Origin: Phallusia mammillata
Lineage: Eukaryota
Assembly (NCBI GenBank): GCA_965637545.1
Contig: OZ281494.1
Coordinates: 29,512,001-29,576,000, forward strand
Reading direction: 5' to 3'
Length of the DNA: 64,000 bases
Shown: in pieces, positions 40,830 through 61,284 of the stretch
Numbering within the stretch: the first letter of the stretch is position 1
Layout: the number at the start of each line of letters is the position of its first letter
The notes under the pieces: generated by a model
Told to the model about the DNA's origin: nothing
Seen by the model: only the letters and a program-made list of their open reading frames with translations
The model's database searches: none
Position numbers and translations under genes: made by a program

Positions 40830-43800
40830 TTAGTAAGGCAAAATTTCATCTTCTTTTTCAATGCAATCATCGTTCGTTTGATTGCCGACGTCGTTCGTTT
40901 TCAGATCACCAGTGCGTCTTCTTCTAGCCAGCACAGTCTCCTTGGAAACCGTCCTCAGGTCCCAGGCAAGTCCCAGCTTTTCCATAAGCTCGATAAAATA
41001 TGTGGTGAAGCAAATTGCTAGACCGTACTCGTTAGATCGGTAATCTTGCGGGAACACGTGATGGTAGTTATGAAAACCTTCGCCTTTAAAGAAACAGTAG
41101 AAAATTCTCTTGTGTCTAGTTTGCGCCCAACAATCAACATAGCTCACAACAAAACATTAATTAAGGCTACGCTATAGGAAAAGCTCGAACAGTGTTGATG
41201 TGATATCTCAAACCAGGTAAGTTTAAATTTTCCGAAGATAACCAAGATGTTGCGTGTTTTGGGTGTTGCAAGCAGTATTTTGTGAGCGTGTGCAATAAGC
41301 TTCTAGTAACAAGCTAGAAGTAGCCTATACAAAACAGTAATATTGTAACCAAGTGGTCCGAACTCTACGTTTTTTCCGAATTAAACCCTAAAGTTGGTAA
41401 AATCGAGTTTGTTCTCAGGTTCGAATTAAGCCTGATTTAATTCCAAACCCTTTGGATAAATTGGTCGAATAGGATTGTAAAAAAACTAATAAAGTTTTGA
41501 CCACAGCACAGGCATACTTACCCATGGTGCAAACGGTAACAAACATGGAGTTAGACGAACTTATTGTCGTGTCGATGGGCCTGTAACCGTACGAATGTGC
41601 CACGCTGTTCACGAAAAAGGTAAAATGAACCGACAACAGGTGACGAAACATTCCAACAGTGAACGATGCCATAGCTGACTCAGCAAAAAAGTACCACGTG
41701 ATAAATGGGGCAAAGAAGAATGCCAAAAGGGGCGCCGCAATGTCGTAATATCTTTAAAAATAAATAAAGCCCATAAAAGCAATTGGCCAATAACAAATGT
41801 ACACAGCAGACAGTGTACACTGTTTCGACCTATAAAGTATCATCAGTACTAGCCAATACAGCCGGTCTTTCGCCACCAGCTGCACTGACGAAACAGCTCA
41901 AACAAAGGCTGTTTTTTTGGAAAGGTGCATTTAGGCTACATATCATGAGTGTTATATTTAAACAGGATATTTTGGTATGTCGCTCAAAAATAATACAAAC
42001 TACAAAGCGACCAACCACAAGGACTACCAAATCAGCGTGGCAGGCGGAAAGTGGATGTCAAACCAGTAAAGAGATTTAATGCAACTTTACTGTAACATTT
42101 GATCTTTGCACAATTCAAATCTATGTCGGCGCTTTTTTTGCATGTGCTATTGTGTGTGATCCACAAGCGAGTAATCCTACTTACCTTTTTTGAAACATCA
42201 CCACCGGATTGGAGCGCATGTCACTAAGGTCTATTTTCTCCCCCTTCTCGATAACCTGAGGCAACCTGGGCATGAAAGCCCAACCCAAATGAGTAAAGAA
42301 GAATCCACGCCGAGCATCATGTGGATCAGCGTCCGTGTCGACGTATTTGTGGTGAACACGGTGGTCACGAACCCATGTGTAAATTGGGTTCTGTAGTACA
42401 ATAAATAGTTAGCTTGATAATATGCAATAAAGACATATTTATAGCGGGTCTGAATAGGGGCCTGAACTTGAAGGTACAAGCCACAACAAAAAGGAATTTT
42501 AAGTTAGTTTTATTCAAATTTCAGCTCCAATCCGACGCAGAGTTGCAAGTCGGGCCGGGCTTTTCGGGCCGGGTTCGGGTTCGGGCCGGGTTCGGGCCGG
42601 GTTCGGGCTTAGGTATTTGTCAGAAAACGGGCTCAAAACGGGCCTGACTTTACGTTCCGTTTCCGTCATTTTTTAGTAACAATTCTCTCGCTTTGATCGA
42701 ATGCCCACCCTGGTCTAAAACGTATTGTTTACCCCATTGTCTACTATTGTTCATTGTGTTTGTTGTCTTTTCTCTTTTTTTCTTTCTCATACTTTGTTGC
42801 AAGGCTTTCGTGGATAGACCTGTCAATCAAAATTTCGGGCCTAAACGGGCTTCTCAAAAACGTTTCGGGTTCGGGTCGGGCTTCGGGCTTATACTTTCGG
42901 GTTCGGGCCGGGTTCGGGCTCAGATTTCGGGCCCGCTTGCAACTCTGATCCGACGTACTTGCAACTCTGTATTAAAGCAACTCTTACACTTTTCATTTCT
43001 TAAGTTTTGTTCAACATTGGCCTGTCGCACTTATTGGTAACAATGTGATATCTTCAGTTAGTTGCCCAAATAAATTTAAATGTTCAGAAACGGTTAGTGT
43101 TTCACATCTTTAAGTCATGTTGTGGGTCACAATCCCATTTTAATAAACATTTAAGCCTTAAATTAAAAAAACAAACATGGGAACCACAGTGTTAAAATGA
43201 GCTAACGTCAGTAAAACATTTCGACCTAATTATTCGTAAGTTGAAACCAGTTTTTTTTTACACGCAACAAAGGTAGGCTACTTACTAAAATGGCCATCGG
43301 TTTATTGTAATTTACCTGCCTGGCGGCGGTCTGAGCCACGGCTAAGAATATTTGCAGTGGCATGGATGCTTTGTAAGAACGGTGAGACCATAGACGATGT
43401 ACTCCTGCCATTGTACCAAGCTGAACATATTCCAGGAATATAAGATCTGCGTAAGAAAAACGTATAAGTTTAAAAAAACAGGAATACTGCTCTAGAAAGA
43501 TTCAAAACGTCTAGTGATTTTTAATACATGTAAAACGTTCAAGACAATCGTAATGCTGTATTTAGCATGACATACAATAAACTGTCTATGTAGTTTTACC
43601 GTTTTTAACAATTTGCAATATAGTTTGATTAATGTGGTTCAACATAATAACATAAACTGACAAAGTTCCAAATAAGCCCCATAAAGATAAGTTATTACTT
43701 CAAAAACTGATTTTCAAATTATTTAAATAATTTTGCAATCTATAAGTTGCACTTACTGAATAGCAGAGTCTTCCAATTGCACTGAAACATCTGGAAGATT

Positions 43801-43904
43801 CCAATAACAGCAACCGAATGCAAAAAGGCAACAAAATACACGACAGGCCAATTAACATATTGGTACTGTGTCTCCTTCGTTATGTGCTGGTTTCTCAAAC
43901 CCAT
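40830..43904 (-). CDS. SCD: Stearoyl-CoA (Delta9-type) desaturase, divergent paralog 'b', complete, 322 aa
   Basis: 5 exons (minus): 43904-43757, 43446-43316, 42390-42185, 41751-41522, 41083-40830. Total 969 nt. His boxes HRLWSH, DHRVHH, NSVAH and HNYHH all intact. Confidence 0.92.
42538..42947. mobile_element. hAT-type MITE, 410 bp, recent
   Basis: 12-bp TIR CAGAGTTGCAAG and perfect 8-bp TSD ATCCGACG. The empty site is visible in the duplicate block (~49257-49264). Confidence 0.9.
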
Positions 43905-44657
43905 TTTTGCAGATTAAAGACCTATTATGTTTCTTTCTATTTGTAAAATAAAATAAAAAATAAAAAACCGTAATTGTCACCGAATGCGCAAAACTTAACT
44001 GTTTTGTTGTAATTCCTTTAACCCATGAGATGATTTCTACTATTTAGCTGTGGTTCTGTGCGTTACTCCATAGCTGACCAACGTAAGTATTTCTTATCAC
44101 AAACTAGCCAAATTGCAGCTAATCATCAATCTGATTAAAACCGATTCGGCCAAAGATTTTTAGTTTGTTTTGTTCCCCTAAATAACTGATCCACATCTGT
44201 TCAGTTAATAATGTGTCTTTAGAGTGGAGTATGTAGCGGTTTATATGTCTCACGTTCAGGACGCTGCATGGATGCATATGTTGGAGTAACTGCGTGCTTT
44301 CCGGACAATCAAGTTAAATTGCGCAAAACGCGTGGTGACTGAGTTCCAGCGATTAGAATGTAAACAATGAGTAAGCGGTGTAAGTCAAAATCTTCTAACT
44401 AATCTAAAAAACAATAAGTCAAGTCAAAATGTACTAACACCGTACCTCACGGCTGACTAACATTTGGCTAATTTTTGATAGGTGGTAAAAGGGCATTTTT
44501 GCTATTTAAAGCAATATATATATATATCTAATAACGCTTGGTCTATTAGGTTTGAGGTAAGGGTATTGGCATTCAAAATTAAATAAAACTAGCAATATAA
44601 CTTAATTTGTAATGTAAAATTTTCACAAATTTGTATCCTAACCTACTCCTTTTTTTT

Positions 44658-44746
44658 CACGGGGTTCGAACCCAGGACACTCCCGGTGACGAATGCCGAT
44701 CAGTTTTTTTTTTAATGTCTGTATGTGGGTCAGGCGCGCCAGACCT
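44658..44746 (-). mobile_element. tRNA-derived SINE-like repeat, family 1 (5'-clipped)
   Basis: B-box GGGTTCGAACCC on the minus strand; homologous to 6752 and 55562; abuts a MITE. Confidence 0.6.
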
Positions 44747-44748
44747 TC

Positions 44749-45058
44749 CAGTCTGGGTCGCGAAATATTTTAAATGAATATAAGCATCGCATCTATAGTT
44801 TTAATGAAATTCAGCTTTTTTCAACCTCCTAATTATTGTAGCATTGTTACATAAGACTACGTAACTGTTGCATACAACAAAGTAACAAATTTTGTAACAA
44901 TGTATAACGTAAAAGTTAAGCGCACCTGTACAAGCAGTCATGCGCTTTCTGCACTATTTTATATTAAAACCAAGTACAGATCACGACCAGATGCTTGGGT
45001 CGCGAAAATTTAGAGCAATTTTTTTAGGGTCGCACCAAAAAGTATTTGCGGACCCCTG
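44749..45058. mobile_element. Truncated MITE of the CAGGGGTCCGCAAAT family
   Basis: Right end ATTTGCGGACCCCTG; body matches 56230-56817. Duplicate copy at ~50719-51029. Confidence 0.7.
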
Positions 45059-45206
45059 CTATAGACTGTGCAATACACATCACACACATACCCAACTAGA
45101 CTCGCACACACATACAAACACCACGCAAATGTCGGAAATCGGCCTAACACAATGAAATATTGTTATATTGTTAAATTCCAACAGCAGCTTATAGTTTAGT
45201 GTAGAG

Positions 45207-45427
45207 CAGTGGTTCTCAAACTCGGTTTTCGGGGCCGCATGCGGCTCTCAACTAAGTTACTTATTTTGCGGCTCGCACCAGACCTCAGAAAACCATCAAA
45301 CATTGCTATTTTAGCTTTCAAAGTCATCATCTTTAGTGATTTTCTCAAGGTTTCGTTTTTTTGCGGCTCTCTACACACTTAAAAAATACCATTTGGCCCC
45401 GACAATAAAAAAGTTTGAGAACCACTG
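45207..45427. mobile_element. hAT-type MITE, 221 bp
   Basis: 16-bp TIR CAGTGGTTCTCAAACT; TSD GTGTAGAG/GTGCAGAG (7/8). Confidence 0.85.
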
Positions 45428-45516
45428 GTGCAGAGTGTAGAGTAGACGAATATTATCTTCAACAGTCAGTATGTTTTGTGGGTTTGGTGAATTTCTTTTA
45501 AACAAGTTTTAAAATC

Positions 45517-45613
45517 GACCAAATACACCAAATGCGACGACCAAATACACCGGAGGCCAATTAACGTATTCATATTGTGTCTTCCTCGTTATATGCTTGT
45601 TTTTAGCACCCAT
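45517..45613 (-). pseudogene. Truncated first coding exon of a third SCD paralog ('c')
   Basis: Reads MGAKNKHITRKTQYEYVNWPPVYLVVAF, homologous to SCD-b exon 1 (MGLRNQHITKETQYQYVNWPVVYFVAF), and is cut at the duplication junction. Confidence 0.85.
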
Positions 45614-46762
45614 ATCTTTACCTTTAACCAAGACCTAGTCTATCCTATTTACAAGTGTCTAAACAAACGACATGTTTTTACTTTAGGTAAATCAACAGTA
45701 CATGTCAAACGAAAGCATAAATTTCGAGCCTTTCTTCCATCAATCATCTAAAGTTCGTTTAGTTTAACTCGTTTCACAGCAACTTTCTGAATACTTTATC
45801 TTATAGTTTCACTACTTCAAGGCCACCCAGCTATAGTTTTACTCAAGAAGTATAATATAAATATTAGTAGTTAACTTTCGTAAAGTTTCCTTCAAAACTG
45901 GCATTTTTTCGATTTGAGTTCTTGGAAAGTCTGGCTTTTTACTGACAGCACAGCTTGGACACGTATGTTAAGGATTACTGTATGTCTTCCGGTTGCTTCG
46001 TAAAACGTGATTGGAAGGTAAACAGTGATTAAAACTCTCACAGCTGGTCTCGACATAATTTGCTGCTGGCAAAATGGTAGGCCCTAAATTAATATAGAGC
46101 TCATACTATAGGCAATTTTGCTTCTTTTTATGAAATATGTTGCTTATACTGATCAACCACTGGTTTTAATGTTTTTGTCACATGAAGTTTTGCATATTCG
46201 GCCTTTATTGTCATTTGTGAGAATTATATACTTTCTTCCAAAGAAAAACATTTCAACTGCATTACCTCAGAGTTGTAATCCTGTTTAAAATAAAATTCGA
46301 TTTGTTAAAGATGGTGAAAATGCAGCAAAAATGAGTGCAGAGTCAGGCCTCAATCAAGCCCCTTTTATTGAAACTCAAACCTGAAACCTACCCAAAACTC
46401 TCCCTTACAACTATGTATTACCTTATCCAATAAAACATACGTCCAGGTGGTAATTTCAATTAGCGTAACTTTATTCTTTGAAAACACAACGCAAATCACA
46501 AGCGTCGCCGGTCATGTTTCATGCTCGTTGCGAGTCACCTAACTCAATCACTCACAAACAAGACAGCATTAGTATTATTGATATAGTTGAAAAAACAAGC
46601 AAGGTAGAAGAATGTTAATCACAGTATGACTTTATAGTAACCACGACGTCGCTGCCAAAAAATCGTAATTTATCAATGTACCGGCCATCTCTAACCATCT
46701 AAACCACTTTTTTAGGCATTGAACATGGTTGATAAAAATAAAATATAATGATCTTCTGGTTG

Positions 46763-49700
46763 TCAACCCGAGGCAGCACTCATCAAATCCCCAGTTCGAC
46801 TTCTTCTGGCTAGCACCGTTTCTTTTGAAACTTTTTTGAGGTTGCTGGCAAGACCCAATAAAGACATGAGGTCGATGAAGGCTGTTGTGAGGTTAAAACG
46901 AATTCCGAACTCGCTGGTGCGGTAATCGTGAGGAAACACGTGATGGTAGTTATGGAAACCCTCGCCTGTGAACAAAGAGCCATAAATAAAAACGTTTTTT
47001 GTGCATAATACCAGAACATTACACTTACCCATAGTGAGAAGGGTAACCCCCAAGTTTTGGGCTGGGTTAATGTTGACGTCATACGGTTTGTTGCCCCACA
47101 AATGGGCGGCGCTGTTTACCAGAAACGTAACGTTCAACGAAATCACGTAACGCAGTGACGTCACGAAGTAGGCGTAAATGATACTTTCATTCCACGACCA
47201 GCAACATATGGAGATCGGGATCACGTAGCACATTACTAGAGTAGTCCAGCGGTAATATCTGCGAATGAACCAAAATAATCAATGCACATAAAGGGACGGG
47301 CCACAAACGGATTTTTTTGTAAAAAAGACCACTTTACGTGGTGTACCAATTGTTATTTGTTAATTAGGCAACTTACTTTTTTGTACCGAAATCTTTTACA
47401 TTCATATTTCATATCTCAAACCACGTAAGTTTTAAATTTTCCGAAGATAACCAAGATTTTGCGTGTTTTGGGTTTTGCAAGCAGTATTTTGTGAGCGTGT
47501 GCTATAAGCTTCAAGTAACAAGCTAGAAGTAGCCTATACAAAACAGTAATATTGTAACCAAGTAGTCTGAACTCTACGTTTTTTCCGAATTAAACCCTAA
47601 AGTTGGTAAAATCGAGTTTGTTCTCAGGTTCGAATTAAGCCTGATTTAATTCCAAACCCTTTGGATAAATTGGTCGAATAGGATTGTAAAAAAACTAATA
47701 AAGTTTTGACCACAGCACAGGCATACTTACCCATGGTGCAAACGGTAACAAACATGGAGTTAGACGAACTTATTGTCGTGTCGATGGGCCTGTAACCGTA
47801 CGAATGTGCCACGCTGTTCACGAAAAAGGTAAAATGAACCGACAACAGGTGACGAAACATTCCAACAGTGAACGATGCCATAGCTGACTCAGCAAAAAAG
47901 TACCACGTGATAAATGGGGCAAAGAAGAATGCCAGAAGGGGCGCCGCAATGTCGCAATATCTTTAAAAATAAATAAAGCCCATAAAAGCAATTGGCCAAT
48001 AACAAATGTACACAGCAGACAGTGTACACTGTTTCGACCTATAAAGTATCATCAGTACTAGCCAATACAGCCGGTCTTTCGCCACCAGCTGCACTGACGA
48101 AACAGCTTAAACAAAGGCTGTTTTTTTGGAAAGGTGCATTTAGGCTACATCTCATGAGTATTATATTTAAACAGGATATTTTGGTAATCGCTCAAAAATA
48201 ATACAAACTACAAAGCGACCAACCACAAGGACTACCAAATCAGCGTGGCAGGCGGAAAGTGGATGTCAAACCAGTAAAGAGATTTAATACAACTTTACTG
48301 TAATATTTGATCTTTGCACAATTCAAATCTATGTCGGCGCTTTTTTGCATGTGCTATTGTGTGTGATCCACAAGCGAGTAATCCTACTCAAAGGCGCCGA
48401 GTTTTACAAAAATGCAAGGTGGCGGACGTAATTATGACGGCACTTTTATGACGTCACCAATGCGTGCAACCAAACGAGCTCCAACTCAAAACCCAATATA
48501 CTTTTAATAGAATGCAACGTTCGTCAAATTCTTAAAAAAATGATTTTAAAAAAATAATAATCAGTTGGCACACTTTGCTTTAACGTTATTAACCCATTAT
48601 TGGTTTAGCAACGTTAAGAAAATGTTTCGTCAAGTTGTTGCTCTTGTATCACCTAAGTTAACCATTTATTACAATACAATCGCGTTGTACACAATAATGG
48701 CCAAACATTTACTGTCAACAATTGTGCTATATTTCGCCAGCACGCTTGTTTGAAAGCAAAATTGATCCCAAATTTCTTCAGATTTTACGATATTTTGTAC
48801 GATACCGCTACAAACTAACCAAATTTCCACGGTGGCCGCCACCGTGCTTTACAAACCCAAGGTGGCGGCGCCACCCCGCCACCGCCTACTCGGCGCCTAT
48901 GATCCTACTTACCTTTTTTGAAACATCACCACCGGATTGGAGCGCATGTCACTAAGGTCTATTTTCTCCCCCTTCTCGATAACCTGAGGCAACCTGGGCA
49001 TAAAAGCCCAACCCAAATGAGTAAAGAAGAATCCACGCCGAGCATCATGTGGATCAGCGTCCGTGTCAACGTATTTGTGATGAACACGGTGGTCACGAAC
49101 CCATGTGTAAATTGGGTTCTGTAGTACAATAAATAGTTAGCTTGATAATATGCAATAAGGCATATTTATAGCGGGTCTGAATAGGGGCCCGAACTTGAAG
49201 GTACAAGCCACACCAAAAACGAATTTTAAGTTAGTTTTATTCAAATTTGAGCTCCAATGCGACGTACTTGCAACTCTGCGTAGCAACTTATACACTTTTC
49301 ATTTCTTAAGTTTTGTTAAACATTGGCCTGTCGCACTTATTGGTAACAATGTTATATCTTCAGTTAGTTGCCCAACTAAATTTAAATGTTCAGAAACGGT
49401 TAGTGTTTCACATCTTTAAGTCATGTTGTGGGTCACAATCCCATTTTAATAAACATTTGAGCCATAGATTAAAAAAATAACATGGGAACCACAGTGTTAA
49501 AATGAGCTAACGTCAGTGAAACATTTCGACCTAATTATTCGTAAGTTGAAACCAGTTTTTTTTACACGCAACAAAGGTAGGCTACTTACTAAAATGGCCA
49601 TCGGTTTATTGTAATTTACCTGCCTGGCGGCGGTCTGAGCCACGGCTAAGAATATTTGCAGTGGCATGGATGCTTTGTAAGAACGGTGAGACCATAGACG

Positions 49701-50216
49701 ATGTACTCCTGCCATTGTACCAAGCTGAACATATTCCAGGAATATAAGATCTGCGTAAGAAAAACGTTGAAACGTATAAGTTTAAAAAAACAGGAATACT
49801 GCTCTAGAAAGATTCAAAACGTCTAGTGATTTTTAATACATGTAAAACGTTCAAGACAATCGTAATGCTGTATTTAGCATGACATACAATAAATTGTCTA
49901 TGTAGTTTTACCGTTTTTAACAATTTGCAATATAGTTTGACTAATGTGGTTCAACATAATAACATAAACTGACAAAGTTCCAAATAAGCCCAATAAAGAT
50001 AAGTTATTACTTCAAAAACTGATTTTCAAATTATTCAAATAATTTTGCAATCTATAAGTTGCACTTACTGAATAGCAGAGTCTTCCAATTGCACTGAAAC
50101 ATCTGGAAGATTCCAATAACAGCAACCGAATGCAAAAAGGCAACAAAATACACGACAGGCCAATTAACATATTGGTACTGTGTCTCCTTCGTTATGTGCT
50201 GGTTTCTCAAACCCAT
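46763..50216 (-). CDS. SCD: Chimeric stearoyl-CoA desaturase: b-type exons 1-3, alternative exon 4 (b' or a), a-type exon 5; 305 aa either way
   Basis: Exons 50216-50069, 49750-49620, 49118-48913, then 47960-47731 (b', 230 nt) or 47258-47029 (a, 230 nt), then 46965-46763. All splice sites are GT-AG and either path gives a 918-nt ORF with all His boxes. Expression is not shown. Confidence 0.7.
48389..48901. mobile_element. hAT-type MITE, 513 bp
   Basis: TIR CAAAGGCGCCGAGT / CATAGGCGCCGAGT (13/14) and perfect 8-bp TSD ATCCTACT. Absent from the duplicate block at ~42173. Confidence 0.9.
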
Positions 50217-50628
50217 TTTTTGCAGATTAAAGACCTATTATGTTTCTTTCTATTTGTAAAATCCAGCTATTGTAAATCGCAAATAAACAAAAACAAACCG
50301 TAATTGTCACCGAATGCGCAAAACTTAACTGTTTTGTTGTAATTCCTTTAACCCATGAGATGATTTCTACTATTTAGCTGTGGTTCTGTGCGTTACTCCA
50401 TAGCTGACCAACGTAAGTATTTCTTATCACAAACTAGCCTAATTTTTGATAGGTGGTAAAAGGGCATTTTTGCTATTTAAAGCAATATATATATATATCT
50501 AATAACGCTTGGTCTATTAGGTTTGAGGTAAGGGTATTGGCATTCAAAATTAAATAAAACTAGCAATATAACTTAATTTGTAATGTAAAATTTTCACAAA
50601 TTTGTATCCTAACCTACTCCTTTTTTTT

Positions 50629-50716
50629 CACGGGGTTCGAACCCAGGACACTCCCGGTGACGAATCCCGATCAGGTTTTTTTTTAATGTCTGTATGTGGG
50701 TCAGGCGCGCCAGACC
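50629..50716 (-). mobile_element. tRNA-derived SINE-like repeat, family 1 (duplicate of 44658)
   Basis: Part of the duplicated block. Confidence 0.6.
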
Positions 50717-51177
50717 TTCCAGTCTGGGTCGCGAAATATTTTAAATGAATATAAGCATCGCATCTATAGTTTTAATGAAATTCAGCTTTTTTCAACCTCC
50801 TAATTATTGTAGCATTGTTACATAAGACTACGTAACTGTTGCATACAACAAAGTAACAAATTTTGTAACAATGTATAACGTAAAAGTTAAGCGCACCTGT
50901 ACAAGCAGTCATGCGCTTTCTGCACTATTTTATATTAAAACCAAGTACAGATCACGACCAGATGCTTGGGTCGCGAAAATTTAGAGCAATTTTTTTAGGG
51001 TCGCACCAAAAAGTATTTGCGGACCCCTGCTATAGACTGTGCAATACACATCACACACATACCCAACTAGACTCGCACACACATACAAACACCACGCAAA
51101 TGTCGGAAATCGGCCTAACACAATGAAATATTGTTATATTGTTAAATTCCAACAGCAGCTTATAGTTTAGTGTAGAG

Positions 51178-51397
51178 CAGTGGTTCTCAAACTCGGTTTT
51201 CGGGGCCGCATGCGGCTCTCAACTAAGTTACTTATTTTGCGGCTCGCACCAGACCTCAGAAAACCATCAAACATTGCTATTTTAGCTTTCAAAGTCATAA
51301 TCTTTAGTGATTTTCTCAAGGTTTCGTTTTTTTGCGGCTCTCTACACACTTAAAAATACCATTTGGCCCCGACAATAAAAAAGTTTGAGAACCACTG
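51178..51397. mobile_element. hAT-type MITE (duplicate of 45207)
   Basis: TIR CAGTGGTTCTCAAACT; perfect TSD GTGTAGAG. Confidence 0.85.
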
Positions 51398-51642
51398 GTG
51401 TAGAGTGTAGAGTAGACGAATATTATCTTCAACAGTCAGTAATCAGTATGTTTTGTGGGTTTGGTGAATTTCTTTTAAACAAGTTTTAAAATCATGTCAC
51501 TGTGTTTCCTTTCAACAAGCGAAATATGCTTAAGTCAGCACGAAATCATTTTCATTCATATGCTTTTATTTGCATTTCAGATTTTCTGTTCGTTATTAAG
51601 CTGTTTATCATTGCAGCATAACTGGAATCTGTAAAAGGCAAA

Positions 51643-54600: not shown

Positions 54601-56020
54601 GTACACTACTACGCATGCATAAGGCCAAGAGATTTGGCTTTAAGGCGCAAAGATCTTCCAATCCACATTGAGGAAACTTCAATGCAACGACCGAACTTGT
54701 GGATTGAACACGCATCTGTTGCAGAATCCAGTTATGATTTGAGTAACAACTACATGATTCATATGCATCCGAAGGATACAGTAAAACATTTTTCTAGGGT
54801 AATAAATTCTGTGTCCCCGAGTTTGCCCTTTTTTACATGTTCTTTCACTTAAGTAATTGCGCCTTGTTTTGCAATGATTTTTACTCGTGTTGTCTCCTTT
54901 TTGTTTTGTCAAGCGGAATTATTATGTCTCTACCGTTTTTGATAGAGCTATTAACACCATACCTCACGTGAGATTCACTTTCACAAGGGGGCGTAAAGAG
55001 CTGAAGTTTATATTCAACGGCTAAAGAGGGGTTGGGTTGGGAAATAAGTATTTAACACAGAGTTGCAAGCGGGCCCGAAATCTGAGCCCGAACCCGGCCC
55101 GAACCCGAAAGTATAAGCCCGAAGCCCGGCCCGAACCCGAAACGTTTTTGAGAAGCCCGTTTAGGCCCGAAATTTTGATTGACAGGCCTATCCACGAAAG
55201 CCTTGCAACAAAGGATGAGAAAGAAAAAAGATAAAGACAACAAACACAATGAACAATAGTAGACAATGAGGTAAACAATACGTTTTAGAGTAGGGTGGGC
55301 ATTAGGTCAAAGCCAGAGAATTGTTACTAAAAAGTGGCGGCAACGGAACTTAAAGTAAGGCCCGTTTTGAGCCCGTTTTCTGACAAATACCTAAGCCCGA
55401 ACCCGGCCCGAACCCGGCCCGAACCCGAACCCGGCCCGAAAAGCCCGGCCCGACTTGCAACTCTGATTTAACATTTTTGCATAAGTAACTAAATTTTTGC
55501 CCCGATACCTTACCCCGAGCCTAGTAGCCCTAACCGTGAGCGTTTATAGAGATATTTTTTTCACGGGGTTCAAACCCCGGACACTCCCGGGGACGAATCC
55601 CGATCAGGTTTTTTTTATGTCTGTATATGGGTCAGGTGCGCTGGACCATTCGGCCAAATTTTTGGAGATATAACGTTATGTAATAACCTGTCGAAAATTA
55701 GACACTTTTGGGTGTCTCGTGAGGTATGGTGTTAGTAGCTCCACCATCTTTTTTAGGACTTTCTTGAGTGGGGAATTGACGAAGTCCGGATACACGATTC
55801 AACGTACGGCGCGGCCGCAAGAGCAGCTCTGTTTGGAACTAGGGATCTCGTGTTTCTTCGAGGTGAGGAAGAAATCGCAAAGGACAGAAAACCAAAAAAA
55901 ACGATAAAGCTTGTTGTACATAATGAAGGTGAAAAACAACACAGGAATTTTGTGAGAACAACCCTCAGGGAGCTTCGAAAAGTGTCTAAATACTTCAGGA
56001 ATCTTACCAAAACAGATTGA
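51643..56020 (+). CDS. Alpha-1,4-glycosyltransferase family protein (GT32; A4GNT/A4GALT-like), type II membrane protein, 404 aa
   Basis: 8 exons: 51643-51759, 51847-52003, 52148-52248, 52372-52538, 54170-54291, 54448-54524, 54589-54798, 55757-56020. Total 1215 nt. N-terminal TM helix, VPNIVHYIW, TDVARFQIVLKQGGIYLDSDV (DXD motif), NGAFLTKPNAAFL. Confidence 0.88.
52587..53695. mobile_element. Non-autonomous hAT-like element, ~1.1 kb
   Basis: Ends CAGGGGTCGGCAACC / GGTTGCCAAACCCTG; flanks GCCCACAA and GCTTACAA (6/8). Confidence 0.7.
53797..54083. mobile_element. hAT-type MITE, 287 bp
   Basis: Ends CTGGGGTGTGCAACC / GGTTGCACATCCCTG; TSD CTCTATAA/CTCTAAAA (7/8). Confidence 0.75.
55058..55465. 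mobile_element. hAT-type MITE, 408 bp, same family as 42538 in opposite orientation
   Basis: TIR CAGAGTTGCAAG; perfect TSD ATTTAACA. Confidence 0.9.
55562..55657 (-). mobile_element. tRNA-derived SINE-like repeat, family 1
   Basis: Minus strand TTGGCCGAATGGTCC (A box) ... GGGGTTTGAACCCC (B box). Confidence 0.6.
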
Positions 56021-56817: not shown

Positions 56818-57394
56818 CAGTAGGGTATGGTGTTAGATCTACTCAAGTCAGCGAGGGTTGGTGATAGTGTAACGTGAACCGGTGTTCACTTAGTTTAGTT
56901 TATTCACTGTGTTCACTTAGTTTGGTATATGCTTATTTATTATTTAATTATTGCACTTGCTTTTCACTGTAACTTGATGTACCTATTAATATATTAGTTG
57001 TTTTGTTTCATAATGTTTGTTTGTTTTGTTTAGCCATATTTATTTTCACGTTATTCCTTTCACTTCTTGTTTTTCCACATTCGTTTTCTTGTGTTCCATT
57101 TTCACCCCTTTTCACTTTAATATCTTTATTTGTACGTTTACACCGGTAACATTTCGAACGCATCCCCGCTTCAGTGATTTCCCGCGGCGCATTGTGATTG
57201 GTCACATTCCTAGAGGCATGTGACGTCGTTTCTCCTTGTGTTTGGTGTGGCAGTTCTCTCCTGGCCCCGGTGAAGTGTGCGCGGTTGTTTTGGTGCTGTT
57301 ATTGTGTTTTGCTATAGTGCAACGTGGTTATTGCTGTGACGTAACGTGATCGAACACTACCTTTCACCTTTCAACACTGTAAATGATATTGGGT

Positions 57395-57640
57395 TGTTTT
57401 TACCCAAAGTAATTGGGTAGCTTGTTGGGTACCTTCGTTGGTAAACCCAAAATGCTGTTTGGGTTCCTTTAACCCAAATGCTTTGGGTCATCTACACGCA
57501 AACTTATTGGGTAATAAACACCTAAAATTATTTGGTAATAAACACCCAAACTTATTGGGTAATAAACACCCAAACTTATAGGGTAAAAAACACCCAAACT
57601 TATTGGGTACTAAATACCCAAACATTTAGGTAAAACCTCA
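57395..57640. repeat. Left subterminal array: ~24-bp unit CACCCAAACTTATTGGGTAATAAA (about 6 copies from ~57495) plus dispersed ACCCAA-N5-TTGGGT palindromes
   Basis: Read directly from the sequence. Confidence 0.85.
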
Positions 57641-57900
57641 CTGCACCCAACCACGTAAAAATCCAAGCCTTAAAATGTTCACACATTGATGTCAAAAATA
57701 CTTTTATTGTCTCATGACAATGCAATGACAAGAATGAAGTTGCCTAAACCAAAGTAACCCAGACTGGCAAGAAACACGTTTTTATACAAACAATACAGTA
57801 TATACACAATCATGCACCGTATTAATAATGTGCAGCAAATAAGAATACTTGATTCAGGTATTCAATTTGATTCAGGTATTCAAATGTAAATGAGTGAATG

Positions 57901-60209
57901 TCAAAATTCCAACTTCATTGCCAGCTCTTTAACAGAGTCAACAATCGGTGGCTTTTTTATCTCAAGCCAAAAATATTGAACAAACTGCAGGGCCTTGCGC
58001 ACATGGGGGCAGTATTCATAGTTAATTGCATAATAATAAGACAGAAGGGCAACAACACCCTGCACAATCGAGTCTACCTGCATTACAATGTTCTTTTCCG
58101 ACATTAGGCAGATTTTTTGAATTTTTACAAGTGTCCCAAATAAAATAAGAACTGGTTGGTGGCGGTCTGGTAATTCATTTTTTACGTCCTCATAGGTTGT
58201 ATAGGTCTGCAAGTACAAAGAGTTATGTAGATGCATCAAAGACACTATGTTAGAATATAGTAAGTTCATTAAAAAAATAATTTATTGTCATTTTACCGGA
58301 TAAAGGTCCAGAAGATATCTCTCCAAGCCAAAGTGTTTCTTTGTCTTATTTGGCAAAAGGTTAGTTAAAAGCCACAACCCAATAACAAGTTTCCAGTCTG
58401 TTGGCAAAAATAACGAATATATATTATTTTTAGATCACATTTACATATGTCTAAAAATATGGTAGACTTACCCTGGTTGGTGTTGTCTTCCTCAATAGAA
58501 ATCTGTTTCAATATTCTTTCAAGTTTGGACCCAGTTTGGACTTTCTGTACATAAGCAATTACTTTGTCAAACAAAATTTCCCCATTTGTCTGCAGTTTGT
58601 CCAAGGTTGGATTAATTTGTTGAATTCTGTTCATTTCCCTTAATAGCTGCAAACAAAACAAGCCAACAATAGCACACACATACAACTGAATAGTGGCAAA
58701 ATTAAACAACTATTTTAACAAACATATAAATTCTGTATTAAGACAAAGCAACCATAGATAAATAAAAAATCTTACTTCATTAAATGTAGATATTGCAGGC
58801 CACTCCTTTGTCATTGTCTGTGGTGTAGGTTTGTTATCTGCTATGTACTTTTGTCGGAAGTAAAATGTTTGTGCCATTAACTCTGAAATTTTTTGTTTGT
58901 TTCGGAGAATGATTGGTTTCATAAATTCTTGCTTCAGGTTCTGAATAAATGTTATTTTAAAAAGTATTTTCATGAGAAACATGCATGATTATAAAATATG
59001 ATATTCCACAGTAAAACAGAATTATGTGGTATGGCATGTATTTATTGTAAGTAGCACCTAAAACAAGGCATGATGTTTAACACACCTATGTTACACAAAA
59101 TAAATATGAATAAATAAAGTGGTTTTGTTCAAACACAAACAAACCATTTGGTGTTGTTCCATTAAAGAATTCTCCTCCATGTGACTTTCAAATGTATTGG
59201 AAACCTTTCGGCATTTAGCAACTGATGTATTAGCAAGCCCTGACAAGTTGTTGCTAACTCTTTTGGATGGCGTTTTTTCCTTTTGTGACTTTCTGATTTG
59301 TTTTAGTTGCGTATTCAATTTTTGAGTAATTTTGTGCAACCAGAAGATCTGAAGAACAAACTGATTAGTAATATTCTATAGCTTTATTTTACACATACAT
59401 CAGTAGGTTACAGTTATATCAAATGTGAACAGCTACCTTGGCTTCTTCATCACTTAAACCCAGTGAAGCTTTTCCAAGTGACACTAAAGCTGAAACTGCT
59501 GCTCTTCTCAAAAGTCTACCAGGATGGCTGGTTAAAATGAACAAAAGTTTTAACTAAATACAATGTTTCACACTAACAAACAGAATACAGGTACTTTTCA
59601 TAATTTTTCATTACTCTAATCATCTCAGAGGTTATTTCTCTTTTTCCCTTGTCAGTAAGTGAACCTGTATTTATCAACATTTTTGCATGATAACCAAATT
59701 GACAGGATTTTATAGGAAATGATTTTGGAATTGGATGGGTTGCATTTTCAAAACTTGGACCAGCGAGCTCAGACTCATTTCCAATTGACAAACTATCACT
59801 ACAATCCTCAGATATGACCGTAGGTATACTATTTGGTGTAGATGTTGAAATAAATGAAAAAGAGTCATCAGACGTCACAGGCAGGGTGTCATCCGACTCA
59901 CAAAACTCATCTTTGCTTGTGTTGAATTCTCTAATGGCACCAAAGAGTTTGAGAGTGTGCCCAAAAGGCACACCTGGCAAAATTTTTGTTAGAGTGTCAA
60001 AATTATTGACACATTTTAAAGCCGACGAGTCGATTTTGTTATCTGCAGAAAAAAACTTACAGCTAGAAAAATAACACACTTTTGCATCATCGAAGTTACA
60101 ACTTGTACATACCACTAAACTCCTTACAAATTTTTTCCAAATCATTCTCTGGGATTTCATGTAAAGTATCTCGAACCAAATTGATGACAATGTCTACAGA
60201 CGAATTCAT
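57901..60209 (-). CDS. Transposon-borne SAM-domain protein (SAMD3-like), 8 exons, 528 aa, intact
   Basis: Exons (minus) 60209-60113, 60042-59595, 59527-59437, 59348-59145, 58940-58776, 58646-58472, 58397-58297, 58206-57901. Total 1587 nt, all GT-AG and phase-consistent, no stops. SAM-like FSDNKIDSSALKCV...LPGVPFGHTLKLFGAIREF; LMAQTFYFRQKYI...KEWPAI; ALLSYYYAINYEYC...LQFVQ. Confidence 0.85.
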
Positions 60210-60647
60210 TGTTTCTTCAAACACGTTGCTGGATATTATCACACGTGAACTGAACTTAATAAAGTCAACGTTCGACTGACGTTTCGGGCAAATTCCCGCC
60301 AATCACTAGATGACGCCAAAAGAGCGCAAAATTTAAAACAAATTGTGAAGCTATCTTTTCACAAGTTAAAACATCGTATTACCATAAAACCTAATTATTA
60401 TTGTTATGTATTTTTCATCACAAATCACACAAAAAACTAAAAAAATTTTTTTAATCATTATTTTTTTTAAATTACCGCAACAAAAAATCCTGTTATCGGT
60501 AATTGCATCCAGAGGACCGTTTTTTTGGTCAAAAATATGAAGTTACGCATTTTAATTACGAACACATACAACATTGCAAACATGCAAATTACCCCATTTT
60601 GGGTAAATGTGCAACTCACCCATTCCAACACAGAAGTCTTATAACCT

Positions 60648-60959
60648 TTTTGGGTAAAATAAGAATTAACCCATTTTACCGTAAAGGGTGATTCTCATGT
60701 TTTGGGTAAAAATGTTACCAACCCAAAATGCTTCATGGGTATATATCATGAATTGGGTGGGAAGATAATCTACCCTAAATAAATTTGGGTATGCTTTTTT
60801 ATATTTTGGGTAAAATAAGAATTAACCCATTTTACCGTAAAGGGTGATTCTCATGTTTTGGGTAAAAATGTTACCAACCCAAAATGCTTCATGGGTATAT
60901 ATCATGAATTGGGTAGGAAGATAATCTACCCTAAATAAATTTGGGTAAGCGTTTTTGAT
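60648..60959. repeat. Right subterminal 156-bp tandem duplication
   Basis: GGGTAAAATAAG at 60652 and 60808; AAATTTGGGT at 60781 and 60937 (period 156). Confidence 0.9.
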
Positions 60960-61284
60960 ATTTTGGGTAAAACAAGTTTTATGCCAATGTCGTTTTGGGT
61001 TATTATAGCTATTACCCAAAATGTTGCGAGTTTTTTACCCAAAATAATTTACAGTGAAAGGTTTTATTAATTACAATATATATTATTTTTGGCCAGTAGC
61101 GAAGTCACCGTTGTAACAATTGGTTTTAGCGATAAGCCGTTAGTGCAGGGTCTTGGACCGTTTTACGAATTAGGGAGGTAGCCTCGAATACAATCGGGAT
61201 AGTTGGAAAGGTTTAGCGTTAAAGATCTCGCACCCAAACATCTTTCTGTAAATTTCGAGGTTACCAAAATAATTCCGTAACAGT

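What the first reader, a model, noticed from the sequence alone, without database searches (positions are those of the whole stretch)
46763..50216. Chimeric desaturase with two tandem, mutually exclusive exon-4 variants: possible birth of alternative splicing
Seen: divergent b-type exons 1-3 are followed by exon 4b' (47960-47731) and a canonical exon 4a (47258-47029). Both are 230 nt, phase 2 in and phase 1 out, with intact AG/GT sites, and are followed by canonical exon 5a. Using either gives a full 305-aa ORF; using both shifts the frame. Of 5 coding differences between b and b' (715 nt), 4 are synonymous and the only replacement (Y->C) is in exon 4b'. Known: this exon encodes TM3-TM4 and the NSxAH motif that shape the acyl tunnel. 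Inference: one new locus could yield two hybrid enzymes with different specificity, with the double-inclusion product removed by NMD.
Basis: partly seen in the sequence, partly recalled or inferred. Interest (0 to 1): 0.7.

Follow-up and report, generated by a model that had tools for sequence, protein, structure and literature searches.

The report
Young chimeric desaturase locus, splicing unproven
A recent duplication-plus-insertion fused the first four exons of one fatty-acid desaturase gene to the last two exons of another, leaving two alternative "exon 4" copies in a row. The RNA data laid show only the two parent genes, so this looks like a by-product of rearrangement, not a new alternatively spliced enzyme.

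Summary
The anatomy is confirmed exactly. On the minus strand, b-type exons 1-3 are followed by exon 4b' (47960-47731), exon 4a (47258-47029) and exon 5a (46965-46763). Both exon 4s are 230 nt with AG/GT sites. Using either one gives a 305-aa ORF; using both or neither shifts the frame. b and b' differ at 5 coding sites, 4 synonymous plus Y164C.

The cause is a block-insert-block rearrangement, as the earlier scan note s1-382328 on this same stretch already said. A 4.1-4.3 kb block holding b exons 1-4 and its upstream region is present twice (41203-45516 and 47411-51493). Between the copies lies a 1.9 kb piece of another desaturase locus (45517-47410), with a 14-nt templated copy at one junction.

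RNA-like contigs from three studies show only parental transcripts:
- Gene b e1-e4 and e4-e5b, carrying b-type letters.
- An a-type gene whose exon 3 is not in this window, joined to e4a-e5a.

None of the four predicted chimeric junctions appears, and depth arithmetic leaves no room for hidden junction contigs. The hybrid intron between the two exon 4s has intact parental signals, so double inclusion, with a stop codon 207 nt before the last junction, is the default expectation. An independent DNA run has no contig across the novel junction at 47410/47411.

Verdict: a real-looking, very young and possibly polymorphic chimeric locus. Mutually exclusive splicing is unsupported. Interest is modest.

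The parts
50069..50216 (-). Exon 1 of the chimeric locus (b' copy). ATG at 50216-50214. Identical to gene b exon 1.
49620..49750 (-). Exon 2 (b'), holding His box 1 (HRLWSH). Identical to gene b exon 2.
48913..49118 (-). Exon 3 (b'), holding His box 2 (HRVHH). Three synonymous differences from gene b, at 49080, 49068 and 49002.
47731..47960 (-). Exon 4b' (230 nt, NSVAH motif). Differs from gene b at 47955 (Y164C) and 47935 (synonymous).
47029..47258 (-). Exon 4a (230 nt, canonical NSAAH motif). It lies inside the inserted fragment from another desaturase locus.
46763..46965 (-). Exon 5a with His box 3 (HNYHH) and the stop codon. It is separated from e4a by a 63-nt intron that is in frame and has no stop.
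47411..51493 (-). Upstream copy of the duplicated block (b'). It holds about 1.3 kb of 5' flank, exons 1-4 and the first 320 nt of intron 4.
   Evidence: Self-BLAST, 95.6-98.9% identity to 41203-45516
45517..47410 (-). Inserted 1.9 kb fragment S, unique in the window. It holds the last 152 nt of an a-type intron 3, e4a, e5a, the 3'UTR and intergenic DNA, and the first ~83-97 nt of the next gene's exon 1.
41203..45516 (-). Downstream copy of the duplicated block (gene b exons 1-4 plus 1.6 kb upstream).
40830..43904 (-). Intact parental gene b: 5 exons, 322 aa, with its own exon 5 at 41083-40830. It is expressed.
45517..45530 (-). 14-nt templated copy at junction J2. TGGTGTATTTGGTC repeats a sequence that lies 22 nt upstream.
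   Evidence: RNA and DNA contigs of the source locus stop matching at 45531.
45531..45613 (-). Truncated exon-1-like ORF (MGAKNKHITRKTQYEYVNWPPVYLVVAF...), a paralogue of b exon 1. It is intact and expressed at its source locus.
   Evidence: X8 record 19
48389..48901 (.). hAT-like MITE private to b' intron 3, starting 11 nt after the exon 3 donor. It has 15-nt terminal inverted repeats and an 8-bp target-site duplication (AGTAGGAT).
   Evidence: (X3 has the empty site)

Best explanation
The locus is the novel junction product of a very recent complex tandem duplication (duplication-insertion-duplication).

What the sequence shows:
- A ~4.2 kb block with the promoter region and exons 1-4 of the divergent stearoyl-CoA-type desaturase gene b was copied.
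- A 1.9 kb fragment of another desaturase locus was templated into the breakpoint. It holds the end of intron 3, exons 4-5, the 3' end, and the start of the neighbouring gene.
- The downstream copy remains the intact, expressed gene b.
- The upstream copy (b') lost b's exon 5 and now runs into the a-type exons 4 and 5.

What is inferred:
- The hybrid intron between e4b' and e4a joins b's proven intron 4 donor to a's proven intron 3 acceptor and branch region. If b' is transcribed, the default product therefore includes both exon 4s.
- That product is frameshifted and stops at codon 246, 207 nt before the last exon junction, so it would probably be an NMD target.
- The locus is thus most likely a non-productive, possibly polymorphic chimeric gene fragment. 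It is raw material for evolution, not a working mutually exclusive exon pair.
For: - Architecture: flank-block / insert / block-flank, with 95.6-98.9% identity between the blocks. There is a 14-nt templated copy at J2 and a short A/T-rich similarity at J1.
- Splice sites: all are consensus.
- RNA contigs from three studies, all parental: e1-e2-e3-e4 with b-type letters at 47955, 49002, 49068 and the 5-A 5'UTR; e4b joined to gene b exon 5 (exact match 41008-41037); and e4a-e5a-3'UTR with 0-1 mismatch, joined upstream to an exon absent from the window.
- Depth arithmetic: the depth in bins 46800-47799 equals the listed parental contigs exactly. For X7 at 47200-47399, 27.2 x 59/200 = 8.02. No hidden contig lies at a chimeric junction.
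- No structural basis for exclusivity: the intron between the two exon 4s is 472 nt and there are no convincing competing inverted repeats.
- Age: S differs from the parent's transcript at <=1 of about 690 nt, against about 10-11 expected at block divergence (P about 0.0002-0.0006).
- Y164C replaces a Tyr that is conserved in a, in b, in a tunicate SCD5-like protein and in mouse SCD1.
Against: - Logan contigs drop rare variants, and the RNA samples may come from animals without the rearrangement. Lack of chimeric junctions is therefore not proof that b' is silent or always double-included.
- b' keeps at least 1.3 kb of native upstream sequence and intact ORF-compatible exons.
- pN/pS between b and b' is 0.07. 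I attribute this to inherited polymorphism of b.
- No read-level check of junctions J1 and J2 in the reference individual was possible.
Confidence: 0.6

Rival explanations
1. Assembly artefact. The two blocks are the two haplotypes of a single heterozygous b locus, wrongly placed in tandem (a false duplication), with a mis-joined piece of the a-type locus between them. In that case no chimeric locus exists in the animal.
For: - b/b' divergence (1.6% non-coding, three transposon presence/absence differences) is at the level of allelic variation. For comparison, X3 differs from the window by 0.3-0.9%.
- The independent DNA run X3 shows the same depth (~11-12) over the block and the insert, a mosaic of b and b' letters, and the empty site of the b' MITE.
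- X3 has no contig over 47409-47430 (J1). The bin depth of 10.2 is fully explained by records 7 and 8.
- False duplications of heterozygous regions are common in assemblies (PMC9516828).
Against: - There are no N gaps in the window.
- J1 joins two unique sequences, so a repeat-mediated misjoin cannot explain it.
- A 14-nt templated copy at J2 is a repair or replication signature, not an assembler signature.
- The layout (native upstream flank on copy 1, native downstream flank on copy 2) is exactly what a true tandem duplication gives.
- X3 contigs end at or within ~20 nt of both junctions, which could mean forks in its graph.
Confidence: 0.2
2. b' is transcribed, e4b' and e4a are used in a mutually exclusive way, and NMD removes double-inclusion and double-skip products. 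The result would be two hybrid desaturases with different acyl-tunnel shapes.
For: - The two exons have equal length (230 nt, not a multiple of 3), the same phases and intact sites, and give two 305-aa ORFs that keep all the His boxes and the N-x3-H motif.
- NMD-enforced exclusivity is a recognised mechanism for exon pairs whose length is not a multiple of three (PMC6071210).
- b' carries the native upstream region.
Against: - None of the four junctions appears in RNA-like contigs of three studies, and there are no b'-haplotype transcripts.
- No mechanism favours skipping either exon. Both are constitutively used in their parent genes with the same flanking signals, the intron between them is 472 nt, and there are no docking/selector pairs.
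- The event is too young for selection to have shaped it.
- Y164C hits a conserved residue.
Confidence: 0.06
3. A functional chimeric gene with one productive isoform. One exon 4 would be skipped or weakened (for example e4a), giving a b-like enzyme with an a-type C-terminus.
For: - The e1-3 + e4b' + e5a ORF is intact, and e5a is 66% identical to the part of b's exon 5 it would replace.
- Chimeric genes from segregating tandem duplications are often expressed in Drosophila (PMC5460883, PMC4069613).
Against: - No true 47731->46965 junction was found. The apparent one is gene b's own.
- The e4a acceptor (CAG with its native branch region) and the 63-nt downstream intron are proven efficient in the parent gene.
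Confidence: 0.1

Closest known systems
Chimeric genes made by segregating tandem duplications (Drosophila yakuba/simulans surveys, PMC4069613, PMC5460883)
   Same: A partial gene copy at a duplication breakpoint is fused to foreign 3' exons. The event is young and probably polymorphic, and the parent gene stays intact beside it.
   Different: The 3' partner here is not the neighbouring gene. It is a 1.9 kb fragment templated from another paralogous desaturase locus. Because the donor fragment starts in intron 3 and the recipient ends in intron 4, homologous exon 4 is present twice. No expression has been shown.
Duplication-insertion-duplication complex rearrangements by template switching (FoSTeS/MMBIR, or polymerase-theta-type templated insertions; from my own knowledge of the literature, not checked here)
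   Same: There are two copies of a block with a foreign templated segment at the breakpoint, a short templated copy (14 nt) at one junction, and little or no homology at the junctions.
   Different: The mechanism is inferred from junction anatomy only. The two blocks differ by 1.6% and three transposon insertions, so they probably come from different haplotypes.
Mutually exclusive exon pairs that arose by tandem exon duplication, with exclusivity enforced by frame/NMD, steric hindrance, spliceosome incompatibility or competing RNA structures (PMC6071210)
   Same: Two adjacent homologous exons of identical length and phase, with a length that is not a multiple of 3, so double inclusion or double skipping shifts the frame.
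   Different: The exons are old paralogues (29% amino-acid identity) brought together by gene fusion, not by tandem exon duplication. The intron between them is 472 nt, so there is no steric block. Introns are GT-AG and no competing RNA structure was found. No single-inclusion transcript has been seen.
Stearoyl-CoA (delta-9) desaturase, mouse SCD1 structure 4YMK / human 4ZYO
   Same: e4a-e5a matches SCD1 at E 2e-35 and e4b' at E 1e-8. His boxes HRLWSH, HRVHH and HNYHH and the N-x3-H motif are all present.
   Different: The b-type exons are strongly divergent (e4b' is 25-35% identical to other animal SCDs). The activity and regiospecificity of a, b or any hybrid are unknown.
False duplications of heterozygous regions in assemblies (PMC9516828)
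   Same: Two near-identical tandem copies whose divergence equals allelic divergence. An independent DNA sample gives no evidence for two copies.
   Different: There is a foreign 1.9 kb insert with a templated junction between the copies, and no gap.

Membership tests
Acyl-CoA delta-9 desaturase (SCD / Pfam FA_desaturase PF00487) | Three histidine boxes (HxxxxH, HxxHH, HxxHH) plus the Asn-x3-His of TM4 | tested here: met
   HRLWSH in e2, HRVHH in e3, NSVAH in e4b' or NSAAH in e4a, and HNYHH in e5a, in both 305-aa models.
Acyl-CoA delta-9 desaturase (SCD / Pfam FA_desaturase PF00487) | Significant sequence similarity to solved SCD1 and to the Pfam model | tested here: met
   4YMK matches e4a-e5a at E 2e-35 and e4b' at E 1.3e-8. 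Exon 3 alone hits PF00487 at E 1.2e-5, below the gathering score because it is a fragment. The whole spliced proteins could not be submitted by reference.
Acyl-CoA delta-9 desaturase (SCD / Pfam FA_desaturase PF00487) | Desaturase activity of the hybrid proteins | not testable with these tools
   Needs expression in yeast ole1 or a similar host.
Mutually exclusive exon pair | Adjacent homologous exons of the same length and phase | tested here: met
   Both are 230 nt, phase 2 in and phase 1 out, and both align to SCD1 residues ~191-268.
Mutually exclusive exon pair | Mature transcripts that contain exactly one of the two exons | tested here: not met
   No 48913->47258, 47731->46965 or 47731->47258 junction appears in RNA-like contigs of X7, X11 and X8, and the depth is fully explained by parental contigs. 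Caveat: these are contigs only, and the carrier status of the samples is unknown.
Mutually exclusive exon pair | A mechanism that enforces exclusivity (steric, U2/U12, competing RNA structure, or frame/NMD) | tested here: inconclusive
   The intron is 472 nt and GT-AG, so steric hindrance and U12 incompatibility are excluded. The only inverted repeats are chance-size, 12-15 nt. A frameshift with a PTC 207 nt before the last junction would allow an NMD filter, but nothing promotes skipping.
Tandem-duplication chimeric gene | Duplicated block with the native flank on each outer side and a novel junction inside | tested here: met
   Self-BLAST and junction alignments.
Tandem-duplication chimeric gene | The junctions exist in genomic DNA of an animal, independently of the assembly | tested here: inconclusive
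   The independent DNA run X3 has no contig over J1 (47409-47430) and single-level depth, yet its contigs end at or near J1 and J2.
Tandem-duplication chimeric gene | A chimeric transcript | tested here: not met
   only parental transcripts are present.

The most novel reading that the evidence does not exclude
A template-switch rearrangement has just placed a paralogue's exon 4 next to the resident exon 4. In carrier animals the b' promoter would drive transcripts in which frame/NMD filtering leaves two single-inclusion hybrid desaturases. That would be a caught-in-the-act origin of a mutually exclusive exon pair by paralogue exon capture, not by tandem exon duplication.
Probability: 0.06. 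Interest if true: 0.7.

Novelty: new member of a known kind. Interest (0 to 1): 0.3.

Why it matters
If the rearrangement is real, it is a clean and very young example of how a complex tandem duplication shuffles exons between paralogous enzyme genes. It creates, in one step, a locus with two interchangeable copies of the exon that carries part of the metal-binding site and the transmembrane helices. Such loci are the raw material from which mutually exclusive exons could evolve. The present evidence says it is not yet, and may never be, a working alternative-splicing unit. It is also a warning for annotation. A gene predictor would happily emit either 305-aa hybrid protein, although neither has transcript support.

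Tried and rejected
- Apparent e4b'->e5a joint (46964->47730). Rejected: only 45 nt fit e5a, and the loose end is gene b exon 5.
- a-type exons 1-3 hidden in this window, so that e4a/e5a would be the resident gene. Rejected: tblastn with the two models and five outside SCDs finds no further desaturase exons, and the a-type exon 3 tag has 0 matches at <=3 mismatches.
- Competing RNA structures. Only the MITE's terminal repeats and 12-15-nt chance pairs were found.
- Exact look-ups of the genomic ORFs 46766-47233 and 47627-47881 in public assemblies. Neither is on record.
- Protein searches to recover this species' own a, b or hybrid proteins, using the 171-aa stop-free e4a-e5a ORF and then a profile of exon pieces on a tunicate SCD. 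The best identity was 54-58%, and nothing came from the same species.
- The spliced 305-aa models could not be submitted to exact look-ups, family scans or structure prediction. They have no reference, and I did not type them.
- pN/pS = 0.07 as evidence for selection on b'. Rejected because the insert is far younger than the b/b' differences, and at least one 'b-prime' coding letter (49080) segregates in other samples.
- Scan-note searches for the source cluster ('desaturase', 'stearoyl', by sequence). Nothing was found.
Full report
**1. Observation.**

| Exon | Coordinates | Length |
|---|---|---|
| e1 | 50216-50069 | 148 nt |
| e2 | 49750-49620 | 131 nt |
| e3 | 49118-48913 | 206 nt |
| e4b' | 47960-47731 | 230 nt |
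| e4a | 47258-47029 | 230 nt |
| e5a | 46965-46763 | 203 nt incl. stop |

- All acceptors end in AG and all donors are GTAAGT or GTAAAT.
- With either exon 4 the CDS is 918 nt (305 aa). With both it is 1148 nt, with a stop at codon 246, eight codons into e4a and 207 nt before the last exon junction. With neither exon the frame is also lost.
- Both 305-aa models keep HRLWSH, HRVHH, N-S-x-A-H and HNYHH.
- e4a-e5a matches mouse SCD1 (4YMK) at E 2e-35 and e4b' at E 1.3e-8, over the same SCD1 segment that holds the Asn/His of the di-iron site.
- The two exon 4 versions share only 22 of 76 residues, so they are old paralogues.

**2. Where the arrangement comes from.**

tblastn of the two models on the window finds a complete second gene downstream on the same strand. 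This is gene b: e1 43904-43757, e2 43446-43316, e3 42390-42185, e4 41751-41522 and its own e5 at 41083-40830, giving 322 aa.

Self-BLAST shows that 41203-45516 and 47411-51493 are two copies of one block at 95.6-98.9% identity. Three transposon-sized insertions interrupt the copies, and each has a flank overlap consistent with a target-site duplication (8, 8 and about 6 bp):
- 48389-48901 in b' intron 3. This is a hAT-like MITE with 15-nt terminal inverted repeats.
- 42538-42947 in b intron 2.
- 44115-44467 upstream of b.

Between the blocks lies 45517-47410, which is unique in the window. It holds:
- the last 152 nt of an a-type intron 3;
- e4a, a 63-nt intron and e5a;
- about 1.15 kb of 3' flank;
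- the first ~83-97 nt of an exon-1-like ORF, MGAKNKHITRKTQYEYVNWPPVYLVV....

The upstream block keeps the native upstream flank and the downstream block keeps the native downstream flank (b intron 4 and exon 5). This is the layout of a tandem duplication with a foreign segment templated into the breakpoint.

At junction J2 the insert ends with a 14-nt copy of a sequence 22 nt upstream. J1 joins ...TTTGAGATAT to GAAATATGAATG... with only a short similarity.

An earlier scan note (s1-382328) had already called this a block-insert-block rearrangement with a fragment from another SCD cluster. I confirm the layout. The source cluster is not in this window: there are no further desaturase exons.

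**3. RNA evidence.**

It did return many small contig sets labelled 'RNA?' that hold 0.4-0.6 of the words of 46600-47960, which is about the exonic share.

I laid three of these from three studies (X7, X11, X8) and one independent DNA run (X3) on 45400-51399. The RNA-like runs cover exons only and show spliced joints, so they behave as RNA. They contain three kinds of contig.

(i) e1-e2-e3 plus 70 nt of exon 4.
- It carries the b-type letters at 47955, 49002 and 49068, and the 5-A form of the 5'UTR.
- 49080 is b-type in X11 and b'-type in X7 and X8.
- This is gene b.

(ii) The 3' 189 nt of exon 4b joined to '46964' for 45 nt.
- It then runs on into sequence that is exactly gene b exon 5 (41008-41037).
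- This is gene b's own e4-e5. It was laid here only because the first 45 nt of the two exon 5s are alike.

(iii) 3'UTR-e5a-e4a with 0-1 mismatch.
- It continues upstream of 47258 for 640-710 nt into an exon that has no match in the window.
- This is the a-type parent gene at its own locus.

X8 also has a contig that covers the truncated exon-1-like ORF and runs on for 81 nt unlike the window. The source locus therefore carries this exon intact and expressed.

None of the four junctions that would prove the chimera is present. The bin depths are reproduced exactly by the listed parental contigs, so no unlisted contig sits on a chimeric junction:
- X7 47200-47399: 27.2 x 59/200 = 8.02.
- X7 46800-46999: 27.2 x 165/200 + 63.8 x 45/200 = 36.8.
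- The same arithmetic holds in X11 and X8.

Limits: contigs lose rare isoforms, and I cannot tell whether these animals carry the rearrangement.

**4. DNA evidence.**

X3 (another study, 2018) gives contigs of one depth level (~11-14) over both the insert and the block. Its other features:
- a mosaic of b and b' letters;
- the empty site of the b' MITE (joint 48380->48902);
- almost nothing at 49200-49550, where b and b' differ most;
- no contig over 47409-47430, since the bin depth of 10.2 is fully explained by records 7 and 8.

The simplest reading is one block copy and no J1 in that animal. Against that, its contigs end at or within ~20 nt of J1 and exactly at J2, which could reflect forks in its graph. 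I therefore count this as inconclusive.

**5. Age and selection.**

- The blocks differ at 45 of 2828 aligned non-coding sites (1.6%) and 5 of 714 coding sites.
- pN/pS is 0.07, and 4 of 5 changes being synonymous has P about 0.009 under neutrality.
- The insert, however, differs from the expressed a-type parent at <=1 of about 690 nt, where about 10-11 differences would be expected at the block's divergence (P about 0.0002-0.0006).

The rearrangement is therefore much younger than the b/b' differences. Those differences are best read as two pre-existing haplotypes of gene b, in line with X3's mosaic and the segregating letter at 49080. The excess of synonymous changes thus reflects selection on gene b and says nothing about b'. 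The single replacement, Y164C, removes a Tyr that is conserved in b, in a, in a tunicate SCD5-like protein and in mouse SCD1.

**6. How it most likely works.**

Shown:
- the structure;
- the intact splice signals;
- use of the e3->e4b and e4b donor sites in gene b;
- use of the e4a acceptor and the 63-nt intron in the a parent.

Inferred:
- b' keeps 1.3 kb of native upstream DNA, so it may be transcribed.
- Its transcript would meet a hybrid intron (47730-47259) made of b's own donor side (320 nt) and a's own branch and acceptor side (152 nt).
- With short introns and consensus sites, the default is to splice e3-e4b'-e4a-e5a, which is out of frame. Nothing in the sequence favours skipping either exon: the intron is 472 nt and GT-AG, and no competing structures were found.
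- Frame/NMD filtering is a recognised contributor to mutual exclusivity (PMC6071210). It only removes the wrong products and does not create the right ones.
- I therefore rate a non-productive chimeric locus at 0.6, an assembly artefact at 0.2, a single-isoform functional chimera at 0.1, and true mutually exclusive use at about 0.06.

**7. Comparison with what is known, and novelty.**

- Chimeric genes at the breakpoints of segregating tandem duplications are well documented (PMC4069613, PMC5460883).
- Duplication-insertion-duplication events with templated junctions are a known class of complex rearrangement (my own knowledge).
- False duplications of heterozygous regions are a known assembly error (PMC9516828).
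- The unusual detail is that the inserted fragment comes from a paralogue and starts one intron earlier than the recipient ends. Homologous exon 4 is therefore doubled with compatible phases. This would be a route to exon pairs different from tandem exon duplication, but so far it is only a possibility.
- The host is probably a tunicate or another invertebrate chordate, judging by the best outside matches (Clavelina SCD5-like). Its own proteins are not in the searchable protein collection.

Noticed in passing
window 48389-48901: hAT-like MITE private to the b' copy, inserted 11 nt after the exon 3 donor. It has 15-nt terminal inverted repeats (48388-48402 / 48888-48902) and an 8-bp target duplication (AGTAGGAT). 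The family is high-copy (X3 depth 300-3000 against ~12 for single copy), and a related copy sits inside a 2979-nt RNA contig in X11 and X8.
   Followed up: partly
window 42538-42947 and 55058-55465: A 410-bp insertion in gene b intron 2 that is absent from b'. The flanks overlap by 8 bp, indicating a target duplication. A 96%-identical inverted copy lies 12 kb away.
   Followed up: partly
window 44115-44467: A 354-bp segment upstream of gene b that is absent from the b' copy. It is probably another transposon insertion.
   Followed up: no
window 50600-51493 and 44650-45516: The upstream ~900 nt of both block copies consists of very high-copy repeats (X3 contig depth up to 13000). The block's upstream boundary lies at or in such a repeat.
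   Followed up: no
window 45531-45613: A truncated first exon of a third desaturase paralogue, 50-68% identical to b exon 1. Its intact form is expressed elsewhere (the X8 contig runs on for 81 nt unlike the window). The source cluster therefore has an a-type gene followed by a b-like gene.
   Followed up: partly
window 46966-47028: The intron between e4a and e5a is 63 nt, in frame and free of stops. Intron retention would insert 21 residues just before the last His box without breaking the ORF. All RNA contigs have it spliced out.
   Followed up: yes
window 47891-47918: Contigs of the DNA run and of all three RNA-like runs break at the same place inside exon 4b. This suggests a branch in the sequence graphs (another paralogue or a variant) that I could not resolve.
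   Followed up: no
window 57375-61056: An earlier scan note (s1-382258) reports a transposase-less CACTA-like element carrying a SAMD3-like gene here. I did not examine it.
   Followed up: no
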